Assembly: GCF_902459465.1 (NCBI RefSeq)
Contig: NW_022985694.1
Span: forward strand, 1 to 64,000
Length of the DNA: 64,000 bases
DNA from: Asterias rubens
Taxonomy: Eukaryota
Direction of reading: 5' to 3'
A program made the position numbers and the translations under genes. Of the stretch, positions 9,713-51,975 are shown piece by piece; position 1 is the stretch's first letter, and the number at the start of each line of letters is the position of its first letter. The notes under the pieces are model-generated. The model made no database searches. It saw nothing but the letters and a program-made list of their open reading frames with translations, and had not been told where the DNA came from.

Positions 9713-12700
9713 ATAATGCAATAGATATAGAAGCCTTGGAGCTGTTAAGAGAAGAGGACATTACACCGCTAATTCCAAAAGTTGGGTTGCGAGTTAAGTT
9801 CTTGGCAAAGTGGAAAAAGCAAGTGAGTTGTTTGCCTTTTTAGTATTGTAAGAAGAAACTATGTTGTGCTACAAGTGCTTATCTGAAGTCCATGGGGGAA
9901 TTAAGGGTCTTTTCAATCACCTAAAATACATCCATAGTTTACATTCTGGTGCATCAACATTTGTCATATGTAGACAAGATGGCTGTTTGGCATCATTTTC
10001 TCATTTATCGTCATATCGACGTCATATCTTGGCAAAGCATGCAGACATGCAAGAACATACCCAAGGTGAAGAATCAGAAAATGAGCATGGCGCTGGTGGA
10101 TATGAAGGAATGGACGTGCAAGATAATGAAAGTTTGGATGAAGATCGACAAACATGCAAAGATACCCTTGCTGAAGCAGTTTCTTATTTTGTAGCGAACA
10201 TGAAAGCAACTGCTATACCATATTCCAATGTGCAACAGATCATATATGAAGTTGAAGGGCTGGTGGAGATCATTGCTAATCATCTACAGCATAAGCTTTC
10301 CTCTATTGTGGAAGAGGTTCAAACACAGTTCAAGGAGGCAAATCTCTCAAAATTTGAAACAGTTTTTCAAGAATGTGAGGTTGTAAAAAAAACCTTTGAA
10401 GGCCTTCGATCACAGTACCAACAGGACAAATACTTCAAAGATAAGGGATATTTCATCAGCCCAGAGGAAAGGGTGCTGGGTCAGTCATTCACATCACAGA
10501 GTGATACCTCAACTGGAGGAGTAAAACAGAAAGTAAAAAATGACAGCTTCCAATATGTTCCCATGAAGAAAACACTCAGGAAACATCTGGAGCAGCCAGG
10601 AGTGATGGCTGCAATTCTTCATCAACAACCCTGTGAGGATGGCTTGTTGTTACAGTCCTATCGCGATGGAAGTTACTTTAAGGGTAAATTTTCTGCAAGT
10701 GCCGATGTTGTCATCCCTATTCTATTGTATTGTGATGATTATGAAACAGGGAACCCCCTCGGTTCTAAAAAAGGAATAAATAAACTCACTGGCTTTTATA
10801 TTAGTCTGCTTTGTCTGCCTGCTCAGTTCCAGGCTTCTCTTAGTAACATTTTATTGGCAGCGTGTGCAAAAAGATCTGAAGTTGCCAAATATGGCATTGA
10901 CAGCATACTATCAGTGATTGTGAAAGACCTGAATGATATCGAAAGACAGGGAATAGAAGTTTCTTGTCAATCCTATTCAGGCTTGGTAAGACCAGTTGTT
11001 TTTCAGGTGATAGGTGACAACTTAGGGCTTCATGAAACACTCGGTTTTGTAGGTAGCTTCAGTGCTAACTATCCTTGTCGGTTTTGCAAGGCACCAAAGG
11101 AGATCACTAAAAAGCAACTTGTAGAAGATGTGTCACTTTTAAGAGACAAAAACAGCTTTGAAGCGGACCTTGTGTTGGACAATGTCTCAAAGACAGGGAT
11201 CAAACGGTCTTCTGAACTGAATAAGTTGACTGGCTTCCATGTCACCGACAATCATGTAACTGATGTAATGCATGACTTACTTGAGGGTATTTTCCCACTT
11301 GAAATAAAACTTACTCTTGGTGAGCTCATTGATGAAGGATGTTTTACTCTTGAAGAAGTAAACAATCGCATTTCTTCATTTGGCTATGGGTTTGCGGATA
11401 AAAAAAGTAAACCAAGTATAATTCAGGATTCAGCACTCAGGAATCCATCAGGTTCAAGTGGTCAGAAGGCTGCACAGACAAGAATCTTAGCTTTGTATCT
11501 TCCCTTGATCATTGGTGACTTGGTAGATGAGGAATCTGATGTGTGGGAGATGTTCCTGTTGCTGCTTGACATATATAAAATCGTAGTAGCTCCACGCATT
11601 AGCCATGCAGGCGTATACATTTTGAAAGCTTTGATTGCAGACCATCATCGGCTCTTTCTGAGCCTCTTTCAAGACCGTCACCTTATCCCGAAACAGCATT
11701 TTTTAATCCACTACCCTCGGGTAATACAACTTCTTGGACCTCTGGAACAGTACTCAAGTATGCGCAAAGAGGGCAAGCACAAACCTTTTAAAAGGTGGGC
11801 TAGAGCTTGTAACAATTACAAGAATGTTGCAAAGACAGTCAGTATCAGGCATCAGCAGCAACAAAGCTATACTTTCTTACTGAGGAAGCCATTGAACAGT
11901 GAATTAGAAGTAAGGGATCAGATTTCTGTTCTGGTTTCTTCTCTGGATGAAGTGAATGTGTGTTCCTTCCTTGGGTGTGGAAAAGATGCTCAAGTCATTT
12001 TGTCAGGAAGTGTTTCCATTCAGACATACACATACAAACCAAACTGCATGATTCTGGTTGACTGGACTGCCAAAGAGCCACAATTCTCACAAGTAAAGCA
12101 TCATAATAGTTGAGAGCAGTATCTACTTTGTCCTACGGTCATGGCATACCAAGTATTACAACAGGCATAGACACTCTTATGCTGTGGAAGAGTCTGAAAG
12201 TGTTTTCATCAAACAGCCCAAAGAACTTCTCGTGTGCAGACCATTCCATGCAACTAAGTGCAGTGGTAAGGACGACTCTTCGTGGTACATCATAACACCA
12301 TTCAACCTTGTATGATGATACTGTACTGGTATGTTTAATACAGAACCATTATTATTACTTTTTTTCCTCACTAGGAAACATAAAACAGACTACTGTAAGA
12401 AGCATGGTTATTCTTTGCTTTTCTATGCTTTTCTTTGAGACAATTCCAATTTCATCTGGCAGAAGGAGTAGTGGTAATTTAGTAAGTAATCATATATTTA
12501 ATCTAGCCCCTTTTTGTATTTTGTTGTACAGTTTGGACCTCGGGTAACAGCAATACCAATTCAGCTACCAAGGGATATGCTTGACTTTGGACCGGAAACG
12601 GCTTCTTTTGATTGTCAGTCAATGCTGAGTTCCAGTTCGGACTTCAGTGAAGTTGCACCTGTGTTAGGCACACCAGTAACAGGGGATGTTTCCAGTGCAG

Positions 12701-43633: not shown

Positions 43634-44646
43634 TTAAAGTGATGTAAAATTAAGGTTGAGCAAGCTGGATATCTATACCCAATGCTAGGACCTAAAGTTG
43701 ATTTCTCTGCACTTTTTAAGGATTTTTTTAAAGGTCAACTAAATGGGTCCTTAGCTTAAAGATTATTGTTTGTAAATAGTAACCTGCAATAGGTCTCTTT
43801 GCTAGAGACACCTTATTGCAGTACATTATATTTTATTATTCCACTAATTTTACTCGCTTAACAAAGACTAAAACAAAAATACATCTTTCGGGGGAGGGTG
43901 TGTTAACTTAAAATTTATTTTTTTAAAAGAATAGTCCAAAAAAGTCTGATCTTATAAATGCATCCTAAACCTGTTTGATATAGCTTGTCAGCCAGATGCT
44001 TTTTCTTCATAAGTTCTTTCTGAAAAATCTGTACTTTAGTTATGCTCCACACCGTCAAGAGAATATTGTTTTGAAGATTATGACCACTTGGCAAACAAAT
44101 ACTGTATTTAATAACTTCCGTGTCAGATAATTAAGACGTTAACAAATGAAAGTTGTATCATAAACACAAATAAAAATTGATACAACAAAGCAAGGTGTTT
44201 TTTATGTGATTATGCTATGAAGTTAAAGGGTCTGGGTACTTTTTGTATGATACAAAACACAATCTGATAATGATGAACTGGTCAGTGACTGCAAAGTTGA
44301 CATGAATGACATCTCTGACCACGGTGTTGTAAACTGCAAACTTCACTTCATTAAACCTCAACCCATGCTCATGGCATCAAAGTTCCGTGATTTTCGTAAG
44401 ATTGACCATGATGCTTTTGCTCGTGAACTAACAGAACGTCTCCACGATGTCACCTGCGAAGGCGACGTTGACACGGCAGTCTTGGAATTTAACTCCGCAG
44501 TAAACTGTGCTCTAGACATCCATGCACCGTTGTTGACTCCTAAACCAAAGCCCAAACGTGCTAAACCAAGATGGTACAACAACGATGTTGAGGACGCGAG
44601 ACGCGGACGTCGTCAAGCGGAACGCAAGTGGCGAAAGTCCAGACTA

Positions 44647-47600
44647 CACGGCTGTTTCACGTCTAAAAAAGTACGCCCTCTGTTGGTCAGATTGGGCCAA
44701 CGCCTAAAACCCTATTCGTGACGTCATGATGGCTTTGCGGCTATTCATGAATGAGCGTTTGACCCCTTTTTGTTTGTGGGTTTTTGATTGGACAGTTAAT
44801 AAAATTTGCATAATTTCTGAGGACAATTTAATGAATATTCAATTATAAACATGAATAAACAGTTTTTAAAGACGGTGACCTTTGTTTACTTATAGAACTG
44901 GGTGGGCATTTAGGTACATGTGACCGCGTTGTACGTAAAAGCCGAAACCCGCAATTTCCCACTAATATAATGCCGTTTTTCAACATTGTTCGACAATTCT
45001 ACGAAAAAAATATGTCTACATATGGTTGGATAACGTTTTCAAGAGTCATTTTATCCCAAAGGTAAGAAAGGGCCAACATAAATACCGATGATTACGGATG
45101 ATTGAAAATGGTCATATTATTTTTAGTTTCGTGAATCACATAATAACAACACGTACAAAACGCACGTTTTGTGTGTGTACACAGTGATGCGGTACACGCT
45201 GTACGTAGCTTTTCGTGTATGTACATGTGCAATGTACGTGTAGTTAATACATGGGGTGGGTTTTTAATGCATGGGTTTATGCATGCTTCATGAGCCCAGA
45301 CAGTCACAATACGGGCATGTTTATATTTTCAGAGTCTTTGTCCCTCTCTGCTCTGATCTTTCTTATGACCTTGCCCACATTATATTGATATTCACCTTCA
45401 TTCAACCAACATCGATTTAAATACAGTTTGGATTTATTTTAAAATTATGAATTGCATAGGCCTACTGTACTATTTTATAATTATTATAAAGTTTTCTGAA
45501 TTTAAATAATGTTATGAAATAATAAAGTAGGGTAGGGAGGGTAGGGGCCTAGAAATTGCAATTGATAAGAGGTAATAAAGAAAAGGACACATTGCATTGG
45601 TGAAGGCGGTCAAATTTTATTTTAATTAAGAAAAAAGGGCCTCCGAAAAAAAACATGAATAATTTTTTAGATCATTTAAAAACAACGCTGGTATTTATTT
45701 ATATATATGTACAAACAATTATCTTATGTTTTCATTTTTATGCGAAGGGGCATATAGTGTTTGCCTTGTTAGTGTTATTTATGGCACATTCAATTTCAAT
45801 TCATCATTTGCTTCGAGCATACTACTTTATATATTTCTATTTCTTCATTTCTGCATGCACTTCTGGAAAGGTGGTCGTCAGATGTCGTCGCATGATACTC
45901 ATTAGCTTCTGGAGCTCATCCTTCATGCCGTGCACTGCTCGTCCAGCTCTGTTGAACTCGGTGTGCAAAAGCTCACCGCCTTGCTCATTCAGTAGCCCCA
46001 GACCAACCTTGAATCGCCGCAGCTGCTCCATGGTATGCTCCTCTAGCATATGCAGCTTAGGTGTAATGCTGGCATCAGGGAAGCATCGACGATACACACG
46101 TAAGAAGTGTTTAATGCACACGTCTAATAAAAAAGATGAAAATTGTGTGCATTTGTAAAATAATGCTAAGTGATCTTTTTATTTAGGTGTTTTTTTTGTT
46201 TTATTTTTAATTATTGAAGTGCTATTGAAATTTATAAGCCTGTTGATTCTTACCTGTTCGCTCCATGTCTGATTGCGTGATAGGGTTGCAGTGGTTTATG
46301 GCTTTGTGCACATCTGCGAAACAAGAAAACGCTTCATGGAATTTAACACCAATTTCTGCCGAATTCCTTCTTATTGTGGCAGATGCTTCAAGAGTCAATT
46401 CATCGAGTGGGAGTTGGTCGGTCATCAGTCGAGGTTGAGACGTGAGGGCATCTATAACGGGTATCTGTGAAGGACATGATAGCAGTACATAAGGTTGAAG
46501 CTAAAAGGTACCAAGTTCATTAAAATTGCTTAAAAACGGAAGTTTAATCAAATTTGATTAAAATGATTTTTGCAATTATTTCACTGAGAGGGTTATGGTA
46601 ATACCTGACAACACTTGTTAACGTGGTTTCCCACGAAAGACTTCCCATGGTAAGCCTGTCTGTTCACTTTATGTTTTTTCAGCACACCGTCCAAACTACT
46701 GGCAATTGGCCCTGTACCAAACTCCAGTTCAGTCGTCCCCTGGTTGTTTTCCTAAAAAAATAAAAATAATAATAATTATTATTTATTCATTGGCTCACAA
46801 GTTAAATCACAATGACAGAGAAATATAGATTTACAAACCATTTCAGCAATGTCTGCCCTCAATACGTTGACTCCATGATGGTTGTCTAGAAGGGGAAGGG
46901 GAATGTCCTCTTCGAGGTCTTCAAGTTGATCTCGCTTTTCTTGAAGATCTCTTTTGATTGTCCTCTTCCTGCACAGCTCGTTCTCAACTTTCTTGTCAAA
47001 GTCGGTCGTTGAATCGTCCTCAAAGTCGTCATCAATATCTCTGGCAATGGCTCTCTCTTTCAGGATGGCTACATCTAGCTCATGGCACGCTTGCTCGAAG
47101 AGGTCATACAACCTTTTAAACACTCCAAGGGATATGTGGAGTGTAGGGACGATCACCTATATCAATTTTGGGAAAAAGGGTAAGTGTTTTTTGCAAGTAA
47201 TTAAACAAAAAAAATTCTTAAGCACATTTTGTAAATTGATTTTACATTGAAACTACAAGTATAAACTTACATAATCAAGCTCAACAGGGAGCATAGGAGA
47301 GCTCACTATGCTAAATGACACATCCTTGGCCCTGCTTCTCTTCTGCCCATCTTCAACAAAGAGCTGATGCTGCTCCTTGATCGACTGCAGTGACCTTCTA
47401 AATGACGCTTGTCGCTCGCATAGTGGTCGCTGCATATTACTCTTGCTTATTCTGCAGTAAATGCAGCAATATCGGGCTGAAGAGAAAAATATAATAAAAA
47501 GAAAAGAATGGAATGAATGGATGAATGGAATTGTATGACATTCTGCATGTTTGAAAATTAAATCTTTGTGCTATAGCGTTTACATGTCATGGGCACAGTA

Positions 47601-50417
47601 TACATACCATTAGAGCTGCATACTCCATACAGCTTTGTGAGGAACGCATAATCGCCAAAGCTAAAAAGACGAAATTTATGCCCTCTGGAAATAGATAAAT
47701 CAAACAAAGTTTTGTTAAAAATACTAATTATAAAGGTCACTCTGGTTGAATGAATCCTGTTTTTATAATTATTAGTATCAAATAATTATAACTACCTCCA
47801 TTCCAGATTGGCAAGATCACTGATTTGGTCGATTACACGAGGAAGAGTTTTCATCAGGTTGTAGTAGCTGTCATCTCCACAAAAGCATGCACAAGTGACT
47901 GTGTTCTTTAAGCTGTTGGGATGAACTACATTGATGATTTGGAAGGCCATTTTGAACGATGATCCACCCTTGTCCCCGCCGAACTTCACCCATATTTCAT
48001 TATCCGGGATTACGCCGTTATGCCACGTGAGTGAGTTTGTCCTGTTTAAATTGAAGAAAAAGTCAGTAATTATAGACAATACTAACAGCATCTTATTAAT
48101 AATGATGTTTTTATTTATTTAAATAATACTTACAGATCCAGTCGGTCAAGGTAGTCGAAGATCATGGTGCAAACATCATTTATTCTGAAAAAAGGGTGCA
48201 TCTTGAAGAATATAACCAGCAATTGCATCTGCTTTGGAGCTCGAAAATTGCAGAGCAACCATTTCACCCTCAACATAATTCTTCAGAAGTTCTTTCTGGC
48301 TACGTCGCATGGCTCTTTCGGAAGAAATTGTTGGAGTCGGCATGTAGCTGAAAAAAGGGTAATATAACATATGGCATGATGAAATACATGTACTGAACAA
48401 CTTTTTATGATATATTAAATATTGCCATTTGTTTTCAAAGTTAGTTCTGATATGTACATACCGTCGTATTTTCCGCACTTGGTCCCATGCCAAATGAGCA
48501 TCTCGCATCATAGCTAGGGCCTTGTTGGGTGGCATTGGGGAAGTTTCCTTTTCACATGAACTTTGCGTTTCATCTTGTTTCGTGCTAGAAACCTGGCGTA
48601 TTTGAGCAGGCTGTGTAAAAAGGAATAAATATTAGTTTTCATTATCTATCGTAGCATTGTTTCATTGACATTAAAACAATTCCTTGACAGTGACACCAAT
48701 TTATAAAACGCTGAGGATTTGTTAATGTAAATACTTACCCTGCCTCCTGTTTCTAACGTGGCAACCTTTCCTCTCTGGTTCAACTTGATCCAGGTCCAGC
48801 GATCAGCTGCCTTCTCAACTGCCAGGGGAATTGGCCGCCCAGGGGGATGCGACAGGGCACTCTTGCGGAGGATAGCAGCAGCTTCAGCGAGACTATCCTC
48901 GGGACTAGTTGGGGCGACACTCTCTACGACAGTGCATCGTCGGTGTTTACTTTGTGGGTCATTCAACTTCGGTGATGCATGACACGAATGGGCTGCTAGG
49001 CTTTGCAGTCGACCAATGACCCCACAGAGACCACAAGCTACATCCAAGTTTTGAAGCTGTACGTTCAAAATTCGTGGACTTTCTCGAATATCAGTGAACT
49101 GAATTTGTGACATGCAAGATGGACATTTGAGTAGAGTTGATCGATTAAATTTGAAATATGAGGACAAACAAACTGCACAAAAATAATGCTCACAGGGTGT
49201 TTGCACTGAGGGTTTTGAAATAATACACTGACAAATTGAGCAAATAAAGACAGAATGTTCATCAGCTTTCCTTCCAAATACTTCTAAATTTGGAGAACTT
49301 TCGAGCAGAACGTCTTGGGTTGTCTGGGATAGGTGCTCAAATATGTTGCTCGAAGAGATGTTAAAAGGAAGTTCTACCACGGCAGATATCGGCTTGGTAG
49401 CAGCCCTACTTTTAGGTTGCGGTCCAGTTTTAGAATTAGTGTGGTACAAATCGCAGATTTTACACCGTTTATTTCTTGTATGTTTTGTCCAGTCAACTGC
49501 TGGTGTATCTGGAGTTTTGTAGTCCCTAGTCCCTGCCTGTAAATGTCTTACTTTTCTCGAACAGTTTAAACAAATATACCTTGGGTGCGTATCACTACTG
49601 TCCTCCCAAGTGTTTACTCCAAAAATCAGAGAAATTTCTTTTCTACAGCTTGAAGCCTCTACTAGTTTCCTAGTATCCTGGGCTTTGTGTGTTAGCCTTT
49701 TTCCACAACAACGGCACAATTTACGAAGAATATTTAAATGGAAATCATAGCTGCTCATTATTCAACGTGTATAAAACATGCATAGACGGCTGCTGTGAAG
49801 CACCTCAAATAATGCCTATTCGTTTGTACACGGAAAACTTTTTTTCATTTCCGCGGGCTTTCTGTGACGTCACTCGTATTGACTAACACACAACGTTCAC
49901 ACAGCCCGTACGTTCATTTCAGAAGCCGGCGTACAAAGTTCCCCAAAACAAATGCCTATAAGTCTCTAAAACTTTCTGGCCCAGATTTGTAACCTAAATT
50001 TTAATAAAGATATGATTGTAAATATTTGTAATCACGTTTGTGTATATCTGTATAATTGGAGAGGAATTTGTTTTCGACGTTTTTCTGAAGTGTTTATGTA
50101 ATGAGAGAATACAATAAAATAACACAAAAAGTTACACAAAAGACGTAAGATTTTCCGTTTATTTTATTTAAAACATTTTAATCATCAGAAACTTATCAAA
50201 TATAATATAACTAAGAAAAAACATTATATTCCTGGTGATGAAAGTTACACAGTATTTGAAAAAAAATGGTGAAAAACGATCGTCCGATCGTGTAATTTTT
50301 CACGTTTATGGGGGCCGCCATCTTGGTTTTGGTTCGTGCGTTACTGGAGTAAACAAACACCACCGTGCGTTTGTTAATACTTTTTTACGCACGGTCTATG
50401 GGAGCGGAACAGCCGTG
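44647..50417 (-). mobile_element. Chapaev-type DNA transposon (RAG1/Transib-related transposase), 5,771 bp, with a 4-bp TSD
   Basis: ACTA|CACGGCTGTT at 44647 and AACAGCCGTG|ACTA at 50417 give a 10-bp perfect TIR and an ACTA TSD. Removing the element and one TSD copy restores the LINE reading frame. Confidence 0.92.
45837..49758 (-). CDS. 10-exon Chapaev/RAG1-like transposase (~957 aa): Chapa zinc module, RING finger, GGRP motif and RAG1-core-like DDE domain; one extra T near 48190
   Basis: Minus-strand exons 49758-48739, 48610-48462, 48347-48134, 48041-47796, 47684-47608, 47476-47271, 47156-46839, 46751-46605, 46464-46254 and 46123-45837, all GT-AG and phase-compatible. Motifs H-x7-CRCCG..D-x4-H-x4-C-x2-C..W..C-x2-C; RING CSICQC..PCEHYFCAVC..CPSC; GGR|PAQ; KFGGDKGG; FGDY; CCIYC; LHISLG; FVGNH; TPKLHMLEEH..LNEQGGELLH. 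Confidence 0.88.
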
Positions 50418-51975
50418 ACTACCCAGTGACCACACGAACTACGAACAATCCAAACGCAAACTTGCAGAAGTGCTTGTCAAAGCTAAATCTGTCTTCTATA
50501 GAGAGTCGTTGATAGGATCCAGTCCAAATGAAGTCTTCCGAATCGTCAATAACCTCACTGGTAAACCCCGGTTAACCCCATCAATCCAGGACTCGCCCAC
50601 AGTTCTTGCTCAAGCTTTCAGTACATTTTTCACTGACAGAATTAAAAATATCCGAGCTCATATGGATGACGTTCAACTTGATCCAACTTCATCGGCTAAT
50701 ATGCATACATGCCCCCCAAGTGCTCAGTTCATGCATTTCATGCCGATCACCGAAGATTACCTTCATAAAGTGATCAATAACTCAGCGACAAAATCATGCC
50801 AGCTCGACATAGTTCCAACTTGGACATTCAAAAAGCATACGGCTACATTCTTACCGAAGCTAACGGAGATTGTAAATACCTCACTGACATCAGGTGTTTT
50901 CCCAGAACTATTCAAACAGGCCGTCATCACTCCTAGCCTGAAAAAACAATCTCTTACTAAAGAAGTACTCAAAAATTATCGCCCCATTTCTAATCTCCAG
51001 TACCTAGCCAAACTTTTGGAAAAGATCGCCTGTGAACAACTATCCCGACATATTGTTCAACATCAGCTAGCAGAGCCTCTACAGTCAGCATACAGGCCCA
51101 ATCACAGCACCGAGACTGCTCTGCTTCATGTACAAAATGACATCCTTAGAGCAATCAACAAAAACAATGCCATTTTCATGGTCATGCTGGACCTCTCCGC
51201 CGCCTTCGATACCCTAGACCACCAAACCCTCCTGCAACGCTTCCATGACAGATTTGGTATAACCAACACAGCGCTCGACTGGTTCACGTCATACTTCAAC
51301 AATCGCAAGAGTCGGGTTATCCTACCTGGCGGTGTCACCTCCGATGAAACTGTTCTTCGTTTCGGTGTCCCACAAGGATCTGTTATAGGTCCTCAGGCTT
51401 TCACCATGTACCTGTCCCCAATCGGTCATCTTCTTCGTCAGCATGAGGTCAAGTTTCACATGTATGCAGATGACATCCAAATCTACGTAGAATTTGACCC
51501 CAAAATCCCCAATGATGCAGAATGTGGGCTGTTCAAGCTCTCGAAGTGCATCAGTGACGTTCAACACTGGATGTCAAGCAACAAGCTTCAGCTAAATGGA
51601 GAGAAAACTGAATTTTTCATTGCCTCTTCAAGCTGTAACTACAAACATCTTGCCCATCTGACTCTCACTATAAACAACAGCACACTCCACCCATCAACTT
51701 CCATCCGGAATCTTGGTGTTGTCTTTGACAATACTATGTCGATGAGTGATCATTTCACATCAGTCTGCAAATCAGCTAACTACCACCTCCGTAATATCGG
51801 TAGAATCCGAAAGTACATTGACGCTGAAGCCTGTCACGCCACTGTTAGGGCACTTGTACTCTCCAGATTGGACTACTGCAACTCTTTGTTAAGTGGTTTC
51901 AAGCAATCTGATTTAGGCAAGTTACAAAAGATACAAAACAGAGCATCCCGTATCATCTTCTCCTACCCATTGTAG

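What the first reader, a model, noticed from the sequence alone, without database searches (positions are those of the whole stretch)
45837..49758. Near-intact 10-exon transposase with a RAG1-like domain order, inserted cleanly into a LINE
Seen: the exons splice to ~957 aa with a single extra T in a T-run near 48190. The domain order is Chapa Cys/His module, RING finger, GGRP, then DDE core (GGDK, FGDY, EQGGE) with candidate zinc ligands CCIYC and KLHMLEEH. The TIRs and ACTA TSD are perfect, and excision restores the LINE frame KSRL-PSDH. Established: RAG1 has the same order, with core zinc ligands from a CxxC and an HxxxxH pair. No kelch/RAG2-like ORF is visible in the element. Inference: a young, possibly still active RAG1-only relative that is useful for studying RAG origins.
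Basis: partly seen in the sequence, partly recalled or inferred. Interest (0 to 1): 0.7.

Follow-up and report, generated by a model that had tools for sequence, protein, structure and literature searches.

The report
Young Chapaev transposon, RAG1-like transposase
This is a recently inserted copy of a Chapaev-type jumping gene whose ten-exon enzyme resembles the antibody-gene recombinase RAG1 from its first zinc finger to the end of its catalytic core. The family is already known, and this copy carries a frame-breaking lesion that its sister copies lack.

Summary
Window 44647-50417 is a 5,771-bp DNA transposon with 10-bp perfect CAC...GTG inverted ends and a 4-bp ACTA duplication. It sits in a LINE whose reading frame closes on excision.

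The minus strand carries a 10-exon gene. All nine introns are GT-AG, 87-140 nt. The CDS is 2,875 nt, which is 958 codons plus 1.

The break is not a simple extra T. Sister copies read TTTGTG where the window reads TTTTTTC. Contigs of all four public runs laid carry the in-frame form.

Three metagenome contigs are 99.6-99.7% identical. All three begin at the same terminal base as the window; two carry flank there, and both flanks differ. An internally deleted form also exists. The family is therefore young and probably active, but this copy is broken.

Exon 1's family profile matches mouse RAG1 residues 100-392 (NZD, RING, zinc finger, GGRP) at E 1.5e-32. A high-confidence model of a 27%-identical natural relative's core superposes on RAG1 394-1007 at Z 27.7. 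The next fold scores Z 12.

By sequence the core is DUF1280/Chapaev, not Pfam RAG1. The duplication is 4 bp, and there is no RAG2-like gene.

This is a new member of a known kind. Earlier notes of this scan report several sister elements elsewhere in this sea-star genome. Use of the splice junctions in RNA was not shown.

The parts
44302..44646 (+). Upstream part of the interrupted LINE ORF, ending ..RKWRKSRL
44643..44646 (.). Target-site duplication ACTA, left copy
44647..50417 (-). Whole Chapaev-type transposon, 5,771 bp
   Evidence: Sister contigs L001-L003 begin exactly at 50417.
44647..44656 (+). Terminal inverted repeat CACGGCTGTT at the gene-distal end
44664..44673 (+). Subterminal 10-mer TAAAAAAGTA, 10 nt after the CACGGCT heptamer
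   Evidence: This 10-mer occurs only twice in the 64-kb window.
45837..46123 (-). Exon 10, with HMLEEH (46052-46035), EQGGE (45986-45972) and the stop codon
46254..46464 (-). Exon 9
46605..46751 (-). Exon 8
46839..47156 (-). Exon 7, including a variable acidic, helical insert
47271..47476 (-). Exon 6, with the CxxC pair (C at 47465-63 and 47456-54), 20 and 23 residues after the second D
47608..47684 (-). Exon 5, with the second catalytic D (FGDY, 47653-47651)
47796..48041 (-). Exon 4, with the first catalytic D (GGDK, 47974-47972); Pfam DUF1280 E 2.7e-18
48134..48347 (-). Exon 3, carrying the frame-breaking lesion
48187..48193 (-). Lesion: TTTTTTC here versus TTTGTG in sister copies (net +1). 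A premature TGA follows at 48178-48176.
48462..48610 (-). Exon 2, which starts with the P of GGR|P and carries NBD-like helices
48739..49758 (-). Exon 1 (340 aa): NZD/Chapa-like zinc module 49746-49429, RING 49242-49114, zinc finger 49035-48979, GGR 48747-48739
50378..50387 (-). Subterminal 10-mer TAAAAAAGTA, 23 nt after the heptamer
50408..50417 (-). Terminal inverted repeat CACGGCTGTT at the gene-proximal end
50418..50421 (.). Target-site duplication ACTA, right copy
50422..51975 (+). Downstream part of the LINE ORF (PSDH...), with the reverse transcriptase domain

Best explanation
The stretch is one copy of a young autonomous-type Chapaev DNA transposon (CMC/'CMCT' clade) in an echinoderm genome, inserted into a LINE.

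Its single ten-exon gene encodes a transposase of about 957 aa. The parts, in order, are:
- a Chapa/NZD double zinc module;
- a C3HC4 RING;
- a zinc finger;
- a KTGG(R/Q)P motif with NBD-like helices;
This is the RAG1 architecture, without a RAG2 partner.

Mechanism, inferred by analogy with RAG1 and Transib:
- A transposase dimer binds the CAC-tipped ends, probably reading the subterminal TAAAAAAGTA block as a second site.
- It cuts at the CAC border.
- It integrates with a 4-bp stagger.

This copy has a 7-for-6-nt lesion in exon 3. The lesion stops translation after the N-terminal zinc and NBD-like part, so this copy cannot make the catalytic core. It could still be moved in trans by sister copies, whose exons 1-9 are open.
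For: Shown:
- Ends, TSD and closure of the LINE frame.
- Ten exons with GT-AG introns; the CDS is 3n+1.
- Six of nine junctions are exactly contiguous on the sea-urchin homolog P0237. Two are within 1-3 residues, and one lies in a variable insert.
- Exon 4 matches DUF1280 at E 2.7e-18. Full-length relatives carry PF12560 and/or a RING, all with PF06918.
- D, D, CxxC, HxxxxH and E-Q-x-x-E fall on invariant family columns.
- The exon-1 profile matches RAG1 100-392 at E 1.5e-32 and the RAG1 NZD at 3.1e-15.
- The model of P0031:330-984 has pLDDT 93.2.
  - Foldseek's top 43 hits are all RAG1 (best E 8.6e-16), then BbRAGL and HzTransib; Hermes scores E 0.028.
  - VIA-align gives Z 27.7 over RAG1 394-1007 and 26.2 for Transib, against 12.1 for P element transposase.
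- Sister contigs are 99.6-99.7% identical and all begin at the same tip; the two that extend past it have different flanks.
- Exons 1-9 are open in L001.
- The in-frame form is present in all four runs laid, and a deletion derivative is present in two DNA runs.

From the literature:
- Chapaev hallmarks are a 3-4-bp TSD and CAC..GTG tips (PMC4079192).
- A Chapa domain followed by a RING occurs in two Chapaev subgroups and in no other known TE (PMC4411706).
Against: - No sense-strand splice junction was seen in the runs laid. The only two RNA-like joints are GT..AG on the opposite strand.
- No annotated full-length protein of this family from the host was found.
- The core fold was tested on a 27%-identical natural relative, not on the window's own joined protein.
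- No direct comparison with Repbase Chapaev sequences was possible.
- The left end rests on the TIR, the TSD and the LINE frame only. No sister contig reaches it, and empty-site and left-end scans found nothing.
- Contigs cannot show whether the window's lesion is real or an assembly error.
Confidence: 0.85

Rival explanations
1. The copy is in fact intact. The exon-3 lesion is an assembly or polishing error at a T-rich spot, so the window holds a potentially autonomous, active element.
For: Every contig laid from four runs carries the in-frame form, including the run holding 93% of the stretch's words. None shows the window's form. All other exons are open, and they differ from L001 by two bases in all (exons 1 and 9).
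Against: The difference is two substitutions plus one base, not a simple homopolymer length error. Contigs collapse a multi-copy family and drop rare variants, so absence of the window's form proves nothing (notes). The window copy has other private changes as well: 49883, 49787, 48836, 48444.
Confidence: 0.3
2. It is a true member of the RAG1L/Transib lineage (a RAG2-less ProtoRAG-type transposon) rather than a Chapaev.
For: - RAG1 is the best structural match along the whole core including the NBD: Z 27.7, Foldseek E 8.6e-16.
- The N-terminus is homologous to RAG1 100-392.
- The tips are CAC.
- The subterminal 10-mers are unequally spaced, 10 versus 23 nt.
Against: - No exon and no full-length relative hits the Pfam RAG1 core. 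All hit DUF1280.
- A family profile finds RAG1's core only at non-significant score.
- The TSD is 4 bp, whereas Transib and RAG give 5 bp (PMC8355894).
- There is no RAG2-like ORF.
- The closest named relatives are uncharacterised DUF1280 proteins of urchin, Hydra, molluscs and amphioxus.
Confidence: 0.07
3. It is a host-retained (domesticated) RAG1-like gene rather than a mobile element.
For: The gene is spliced and multi-exon, with open exons in sister copies. Earlier notes of the scan report end-less Chapaev genes elsewhere in this genome (not tested here).
Against: - It has perfect inverted tips with a TSD, inside a LINE.
- Near-identical copies sit at two other flanks.
- An internal-deletion derivative exists.
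- This copy carries a frame-breaking lesion.
Confidence: 0.03

Closest known systems
Chapaev transposons with Chapa domain plus RING (Kapitonov & Jurka 2007; Kapitonov & Koonin 2015, PMC4411706; hallmarks in PMC4079192)
   Same: - 4-bp TSD and CAC...GTG tips.
- A single transposase with an N-terminal Chapa/NZD zinc module followed by a RING.
- A DDE core with C(2)C and H(4)H motifs.
- No second gene.
   Different: - This family is from an echinoderm and has nine short introns, whereas many relatives in the protein search are single long ORFs.
- No direct sequence comparison with the Repbase entries was possible.
- The unequal 10/23 spacing of a subterminal A-rich 10-mer is not mentioned in the passages of the papers read.
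Vertebrate RAG1 (mouse, e.g. PDB 6oem, 5zdz, NZD 21wb)
   Same: - Same order of parts: NZD, RING, zinc finger, GGRP/NBD, then core with D, D, CxxC, HxxxxH, E.
- The N-terminal profile match is E 1.5e-32.
- Core fold Z 27.7, rmsd 3.4-3.9 A over about 460 residues (via a natural relative).
- The CxxC lies 20 and 23 residues after the second D here, and +19/+22 in the relative P0031 as in RAG1 D708/C727/C730.
   Different: - Core sequence similarity is not significant (12-15% identity in the structural alignments).
- It has no RAG2 partner.
- It is still flanked by transposon ends.
- The TSD is 4 bp rather than 5 bp.
Transib (HzTransib, PDB 6pqx) and amphioxus ProtoRAG (BbRAGL, PDB 6b40)
   Same: The core fold matches (Z 26.2 and 25.5). 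The tips are CAC. They are cut-and-paste elements.
   Different: - Transib lacks the NZD and RING.
- ProtoRAG carries a RAG2-like gene.
- Both make 5-bp duplications.
- Both belong to the Pfam RAG1 family by sequence, which this protein does not.
N-RAG-TP of Aplysia (Panchin & Moroz 2008, as cited in PMC8355894)
   Same: A mobile-element protein with similarity to the RAG1 N-terminal region.
   Different: [quoted passage not shown] Here the N-terminal module is joined to a full RAG1-fold core in one gene. No sequence comparison was made.

Membership tests
Chapaev (CMC/CMCT) DNA transposons | 3- to 4-bp target-site duplication (PMC4079192) | tested here: met
   ACTA flanks both tips, and the LINE frame closes when the element plus one ACTA is removed. 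No empty site was found to confirm this independently.
Chapaev (CMC/CMCT) DNA transposons | Inverted ends with invariable 5'-CAC ... GTG-3' (PMC4079192) | tested here: met
   CACGGCTGTT at 44647-56 and its reverse complement at 50408-17.
Chapaev (CMC/CMCT) DNA transposons | [quoted passage not shown] | tested here: met
   D, D, C-x2-C, H-x4-H and E-Q-G-G-E fall on invariant columns of a 47-protein family alignment.
Chapaev (CMC/CMCT) DNA transposons | N-terminal Chapa domain, in some subgroups followed by a RING; not known in other TEs (PMC4411706) | tested here: met
   - The exon-1 profile matches the RAG1 NZD at E 3.1e-15 and RAG1 100-392 at E 1.5e-32.
- Pfam RING E 2.1e-5, above its cut-off.
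- In the exon-1 model the RING plus zinc finger matches 1rmd at E 2.2e-5.
Chapaev (CMC/CMCT) DNA transposons | Transposase groups with reference (Repbase) Chapaev sequences | not testable with these tools
   No Repbase sequences were on hand. As a proxy only, all 110 relatives carry PF06918 DUF1280, some with PF12560.
Chapaev3 subgroup | TWA 3-bp duplication (PMC4079192) | tested here: not met
   The duplication is the 4-bp ACTA.
RAG1 / RAG1L / Transib | Core recognisable by sequence as the RAG1 family | tested here: not met
   No Pfam RAG1-core hit for any exon or full-length relative. The family profile aligns RAG1 715-740 only at -3.2 bits.
RAG1 / RAG1L / Transib | Core fold: NBD, DDBD, RNase H, ZnC2/ZnH2, CTD | tested here: met
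   Tested by proxy, on P0031:330-984 (27% identical, colinear with the exons):
- RAG1 394-1007: Z 27.7.
- HzTransib: Z 26.2.
- BbRAGL: Z 25.5.
- The next fold scores Z 12.1.
RAG1 / RAG1L / Transib | 5-bp target-site duplication (PMC8355894) | tested here: not met
   4 bp.
RAG-like transposons (ProtoRAG type) | Adjacent RAG2-like (kelch) gene inside the element | tested here: not met
   No open frame over 78 aa outside the transposase gene, and no Pfam hit on the frames scanned there.

The most novel reading that the evidence does not exclude
- This RAG2-less family recognises its ends in two parts, as RAG does. The CAC heptamer would be read by the core, and the A-rich 10-mer by the GGRP/NBD-like segment, with the 10-mer set 10 nt in at one end and 23 nt in at the other.
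- If so, a 12/23-like pairing rule and the whole RAG1 architecture (NZD-RING-NBD-core) would predate the split of Chapaev from Transib/RAG.
- RAG1 would then not have arisen by fusing an N-RAG-TP element to a Transib.
Probability: 0.15. Interest if true: 0.8.

Novelty: new member of a known kind. Interest (0 to 1): 0.4.

Why it matters
- Reviews still describe RAG1 as a fusion of a Transib core with a separate N-terminal element (PMC8355894).
- A recent preprint (10.64898/2026.01.24.700457) treats the NZD as acquired separately by RAG1 and Chapaev.
- Here one mobile-element protein has both. Its N-terminus is RAG1-homologous by sequence. By fold, on a natural relative, its core is RAG1/Transib-like from the NBD to the C-terminal domain.
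- That fits the older proposal that the modules were already joined in a common ancestor (PMC4411706).
- The family is young, multi-copy and RAG2-free in a deuterostome, and its sister copies have open exons. This gives a natural system for asking what a RAG1-type enzyme does without RAG2, and what its unequal bipartite ends are for.
- It adds a member and supporting structure-level evidence, not a new kind of element. Earlier notes of this scan report several sister elements in the same genome.

Tried and rejected
- PDB sequence search with exon 1 alone gave only generic RING hits. RAG1's RING scored no better than PCGF5 or BRCA1. Only the family profile separated RAG1 from other RINGs.
- The Foldseek search of the exon-1 model was dominated by the RING-zinc-finger part (LNX2, RAG1 1rmd, TRAF6). 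The NZD part was not resolved that way.
- A second word search (alignment A4) looked for an annotated full-length spliced protein of this family from the host. None was found.
- Two metagenome-contig scans, one for the LINE empty site and one for the left end, gave 0 hits.
- Exact-protein look-ups for the exon-10 ORF and for a 71-aa frame in the 3' region found nothing on record.
- I searched for ends on a distant intronless relative (L004, P0261). No convincing CAC..GTG pair with a TSD was found, so recurrence of unequal ends was not tested here.
- There are no other copies of the element or of the LINE in the 64-kb window.
- I rejected the idea that the T-run is a cryptic 3' splice site of a 32-nt micro-intron. 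Sister copies read straight through in frame there.
- I rejected using the all-synonymous differences in exon 1 among L001-L003 as evidence of selection. Those contigs were retrieved by exact identity of the exon-1 protein.
- Depth in the runs was not used as a copy number.


Full report
**What is there**

The LINE peptides KSRL and PSDH lie at 44635 and 50422.

The sequence at those places reads ..CCAG ACTA|CACGGCTGTT.. and ..AACAGCCGTG|ACTA CCCAG... The element is therefore 44647-50417, 5,771 bp. It has 10-bp perfect inverted tips beginning CAC and ending GTG, and a 4-bp ACTA duplication.

Removing the element and one ACTA (5,775 bp, a multiple of three) joins ..RKWRKSRL to PSDHTNYEQ.. in frame. 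The downstream ORF carries a reverse transcriptase domain (PF00078, E 2.6e-34). The exact 10-mer CACGGCTGTT occurs only at the two tips in the window.

**Gene model**

On the minus strand I placed ten exons by frame and splice signals:

| Exon | Window coordinates |
|---|---|
| 1 | 49758-48739 |
| 2 | 48610-48462 |
| 3 | 48347-48134 |
| 4 | 48041-47796 |
| 5 | 47684-47608 |
| 6 | 47476-47271 |
| 7 | 47156-46839 |
| 8 | 46751-46605 |
| 9 | 46464-46254 |
| 10 | 46123-45837 |

All nine introns are GT-AG and 87-140 nt long. The exons sum to 2,875 nt, that is 958 codons plus one base.

Each was aligned on its own to natural full-length relatives:
- On the sea-urchin protein P0237 (36% identical, the closest full-length relative), junctions 3|4, 4|5, 5|6, 6|7, 8|9 and 9|10 are exactly contiguous in the homolog's numbering.
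- Junctions 1|2 and 2|3 are within 3 and 1 residues.
- Junction 7|8 lies in a variable helical insert.

This is good indirect support for the splice model, but it is not RNA evidence.

**The frameshift**

Three metagenome contigs encode the identical exon-1 protein. They align to the window at 99.6-99.7% identity.

Where the window reads (minus strand) GCACCC TTTTTTC AGAAT, L001 and L002 read GCACCC TTTGTG AGAAT. That is two substitutions plus one base, not a lone extra T.
- With the sister form, exon 3 is 213 nt and reads ..QDAPFVRINDVCTMIFDYLDRLD in frame.
- In L001, exons 1-9 are all open with their splice sites kept.
- In the window the lesion leads to TGA at 48178-48176. The product would end after the zinc modules and the NBD-like segment.

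Contigs of four public runs all carry the in-frame form at this place. Contigs collapse a repeat family and drop rare variants. So this shows that the family majority is intact there. It does not show whether the window's lesion is real.

**Young and multi-copy**

All three contigs begin their match exactly at 50417. L002 and L003 continue into unrelated flanks (..GGTA|CACGG and ..TGCC|CACGG), so these are other insertions.

Two DNA runs share a form that skips 46389-47982, a 1,592-bp internal deletion typical of non-autonomous derivatives. The stretch or parts of it were found in 20 runs from 11 studies. These include marine metagenomes and, at 90-95% identity, a 'starfish metagenome' RNA library.

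**What the protein is: N-terminus**

- Exon 1 alone hits Pfam RING (E 2.1e-5), and weakly RAG1_imp_bd (E 0.0017, below its cut-off).
- The exhaustive search found 131 relatives at E <= 1e-10.
- A profile of 52 of them, with the window's exon 1 as first row, finds full-length mouse RAG1 as its best solved match. The match is E 1.5e-32, one alignment of profile 5-266 on RAG1 100-392.
- The isolated RAG1 NZD (21wb) scores E 3.1e-15. RING-only proteins start at 1.6e-15.
- The AF2 model of exon 1 (pLDDT 88.1) matches RAG1's RING-zinc-finger dimerisation domain 1rmd (E 2.2e-5, rmsd 3.0 A). It matches LNX and TRAF6 RING-finger modules about equally well.
- Exon 1 ends ..ETGGR and exon 2 begins P. GGRP therefore exists only after splicing.
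- In relatives this is a conserved KTGG(R/Q)P. HMMER aligns it to RAG1's GGRP at 389-392.

**What the protein is: core**

- Exon 4 hits DUF1280 (PF06918, E 2.7e-18). No exon hits the Pfam RAG1 core.
- Full-length relatives P0031, P0089 and P0060 combine PF12560 and/or a RING with PF06918. They align colinearly to the exons.
- All 110 relatives of the core carry PF06918. The named ones are uncharacterised proteins of *Lytechinus*, *Hydra*, *Littorina*, *Nucella*, *Ephydatia*, *Amphiura* and *Branchiostoma*.
- In a 47-protein alignment the invariant residues are D207, D277, C296, C299, H588, E605, Q606 and E609.
- They map onto the window's GGDK, FGDY, CCIYC, HMLEEH and EQGGE.
- In P0031 the cysteines lie 19 and 22 residues after the second D, as in mouse RAG1 (D708, C727, C730; RAG1 numbering checked in the alignment). 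In the window copy the same columns fall at +20 and +23.
- This CxxC/HxxxxH pair is a published shared trait of EnSpm, Mirage, Chapaev, Transib and RAG1 (PMC12730594).

**Fold test**

The joined window protein has no reference. I therefore folded the natural relative P0031:330-984 with the family alignment (pLDDT 93.2, pTM 0.85).

Foldseek against the PDB:
- Ranks 1-43 are all RAG1 core chains (best E 8.6e-16, TM 0.5-0.67 over about 700 columns).
- BbRAGL follows at 1.6e-10 and HzTransib at 8.4e-9.
- The next fold, Hermes, scores only E 0.028.

VIA-align:

| Target | Z | Detail |
|---|---|---|
| RAG1 394-1007 | 27.7 | model residues 25-655; NBD included |
| RAG1 459-1007 | about 27 | model residues 83-655; rmsd 3.4-3.9 A over about 460 residues |
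| HzTransib | 26.2 | |
| BbRAGL | 25.5 | |
| P element transposase | 12.1 | |
| Hermes | 8.1 | |

The caveat is that the model is of a 27%-identical homolog.

**Filing**

The published Chapaev hallmarks are all present:
- a 3-4-bp TSD and CAC..GTG tips (PMC4079192);
- a Chapa domain followed by a RING, stated to occur in no other known TE (PMC4411706);
- a DDE core with C(2)C and H(4)H.

It is not Chapaev3, which makes a TWA 3-bp TSD. It fails three RAG1L/Transib criteria: sequence membership of the core, a 5-bp TSD and, for ProtoRAG-type elements, a RAG2-like gene. It works like RAG1 or Transib and is a distant full-length relative of them, but it is a Chapaev.

**Ends**

TAAAAAAGTA occurs exactly twice in 64 kb: at 44664-73 (+) and 50378-87 (-). 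Both lie inside the ends in inverted orientation (0.61 expected in the whole window).

Read inward, the ends are CACGGCT + 10 nt + 10-mer and CACGGCT + 23 nt + 10-mer. This confirms what another first-stage note on the same stretch describes (s1-150189).

Whether it acts like a 12/23 rule is untested. My one attempt to look at a distant relative's ends failed.

**RNA**

No sense-strand junction was seen.
- One run guessed to be RNA has two low-depth joints with GT..AG on the plus strand (46508-46976 and 48027-48135), antisense to the gene.
- The starfish RNA library's contigs run unspliced across intron 8 and across the intron 3 region.

Expression of the transposase is therefore open.

**Left out**

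- A phylogeny with RAG1, Transib and Repbase Chapaev was not possible, because no reference sequences were on hand.

**Earlier notes**

Earlier notes of the scan call the genome a sea star. They report several other Chapaev copies in it: intact, transcribed, end-less, or with unequal ends. I did not test those. They mean that this is a repeat finding for the scan.

Noticed in passing
window 46508-46976 and 48027-48135: One run guessed to be RNA (X15) has contigs that skip these two stretches. Both stretches are bounded by GT..AG on the plus strand, that is antisense to the transposase gene. This suggests spliced antisense or read-through transcripts across some copy of the element. The depth is low.
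   Followed up: partly
window 46389-47982: Contigs of two DNA runs (X1, X4) join these two points and lose 1,592 bp (part of exon 4 to part of exon 9). This is an internally deleted, non-autonomous derivative of the family.
   Followed up: partly
window 44664-44673 and 50378-50387: The only two copies of TAAAAAAGTA in the window lie 10 and 23 nt inside the CACGGCT heptamers of the two ends. This gives bipartite ends with unequal spacers. It is the subject of another first-stage note on this stretch.
   Followed up: partly
protein P0005, not in the window: A 1,239-aa protein carries five CXXC zinc fingers, three RINGs and two RAG1_imp_bd (Chapa/NZD-like) stretches, but no DUF1280 core. Chapa-plus-RING modules therefore seem to occur outside a transposase.
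   Followed up: no
runs X1-X20: The element is held at high identity by runs under several coded organism labels and by marine metagenomes, and at 90-95% by a 'starfish metagenome' RNA library. Because the names are coded, I could not tell whether more than one species carries near-identical copies. Horizontal transfer is documented for Chapaevs (PMC4079192).
   Followed up: no
window 9713-12532: Another first-stage note on this window describes a transposase gene nested in an intron of a SAM-domain gene. I did not examine it.
   Followed up: no
L004:705-1835 (ENA contig with relative P0261): A hAT-type transposase ORF (Dimer_Tnp_hAT) lies 3 kb upstream of the intronless 1,031-aa Chapaev-type ORF. 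No clear ends were found for the latter.
   Followed up: partly
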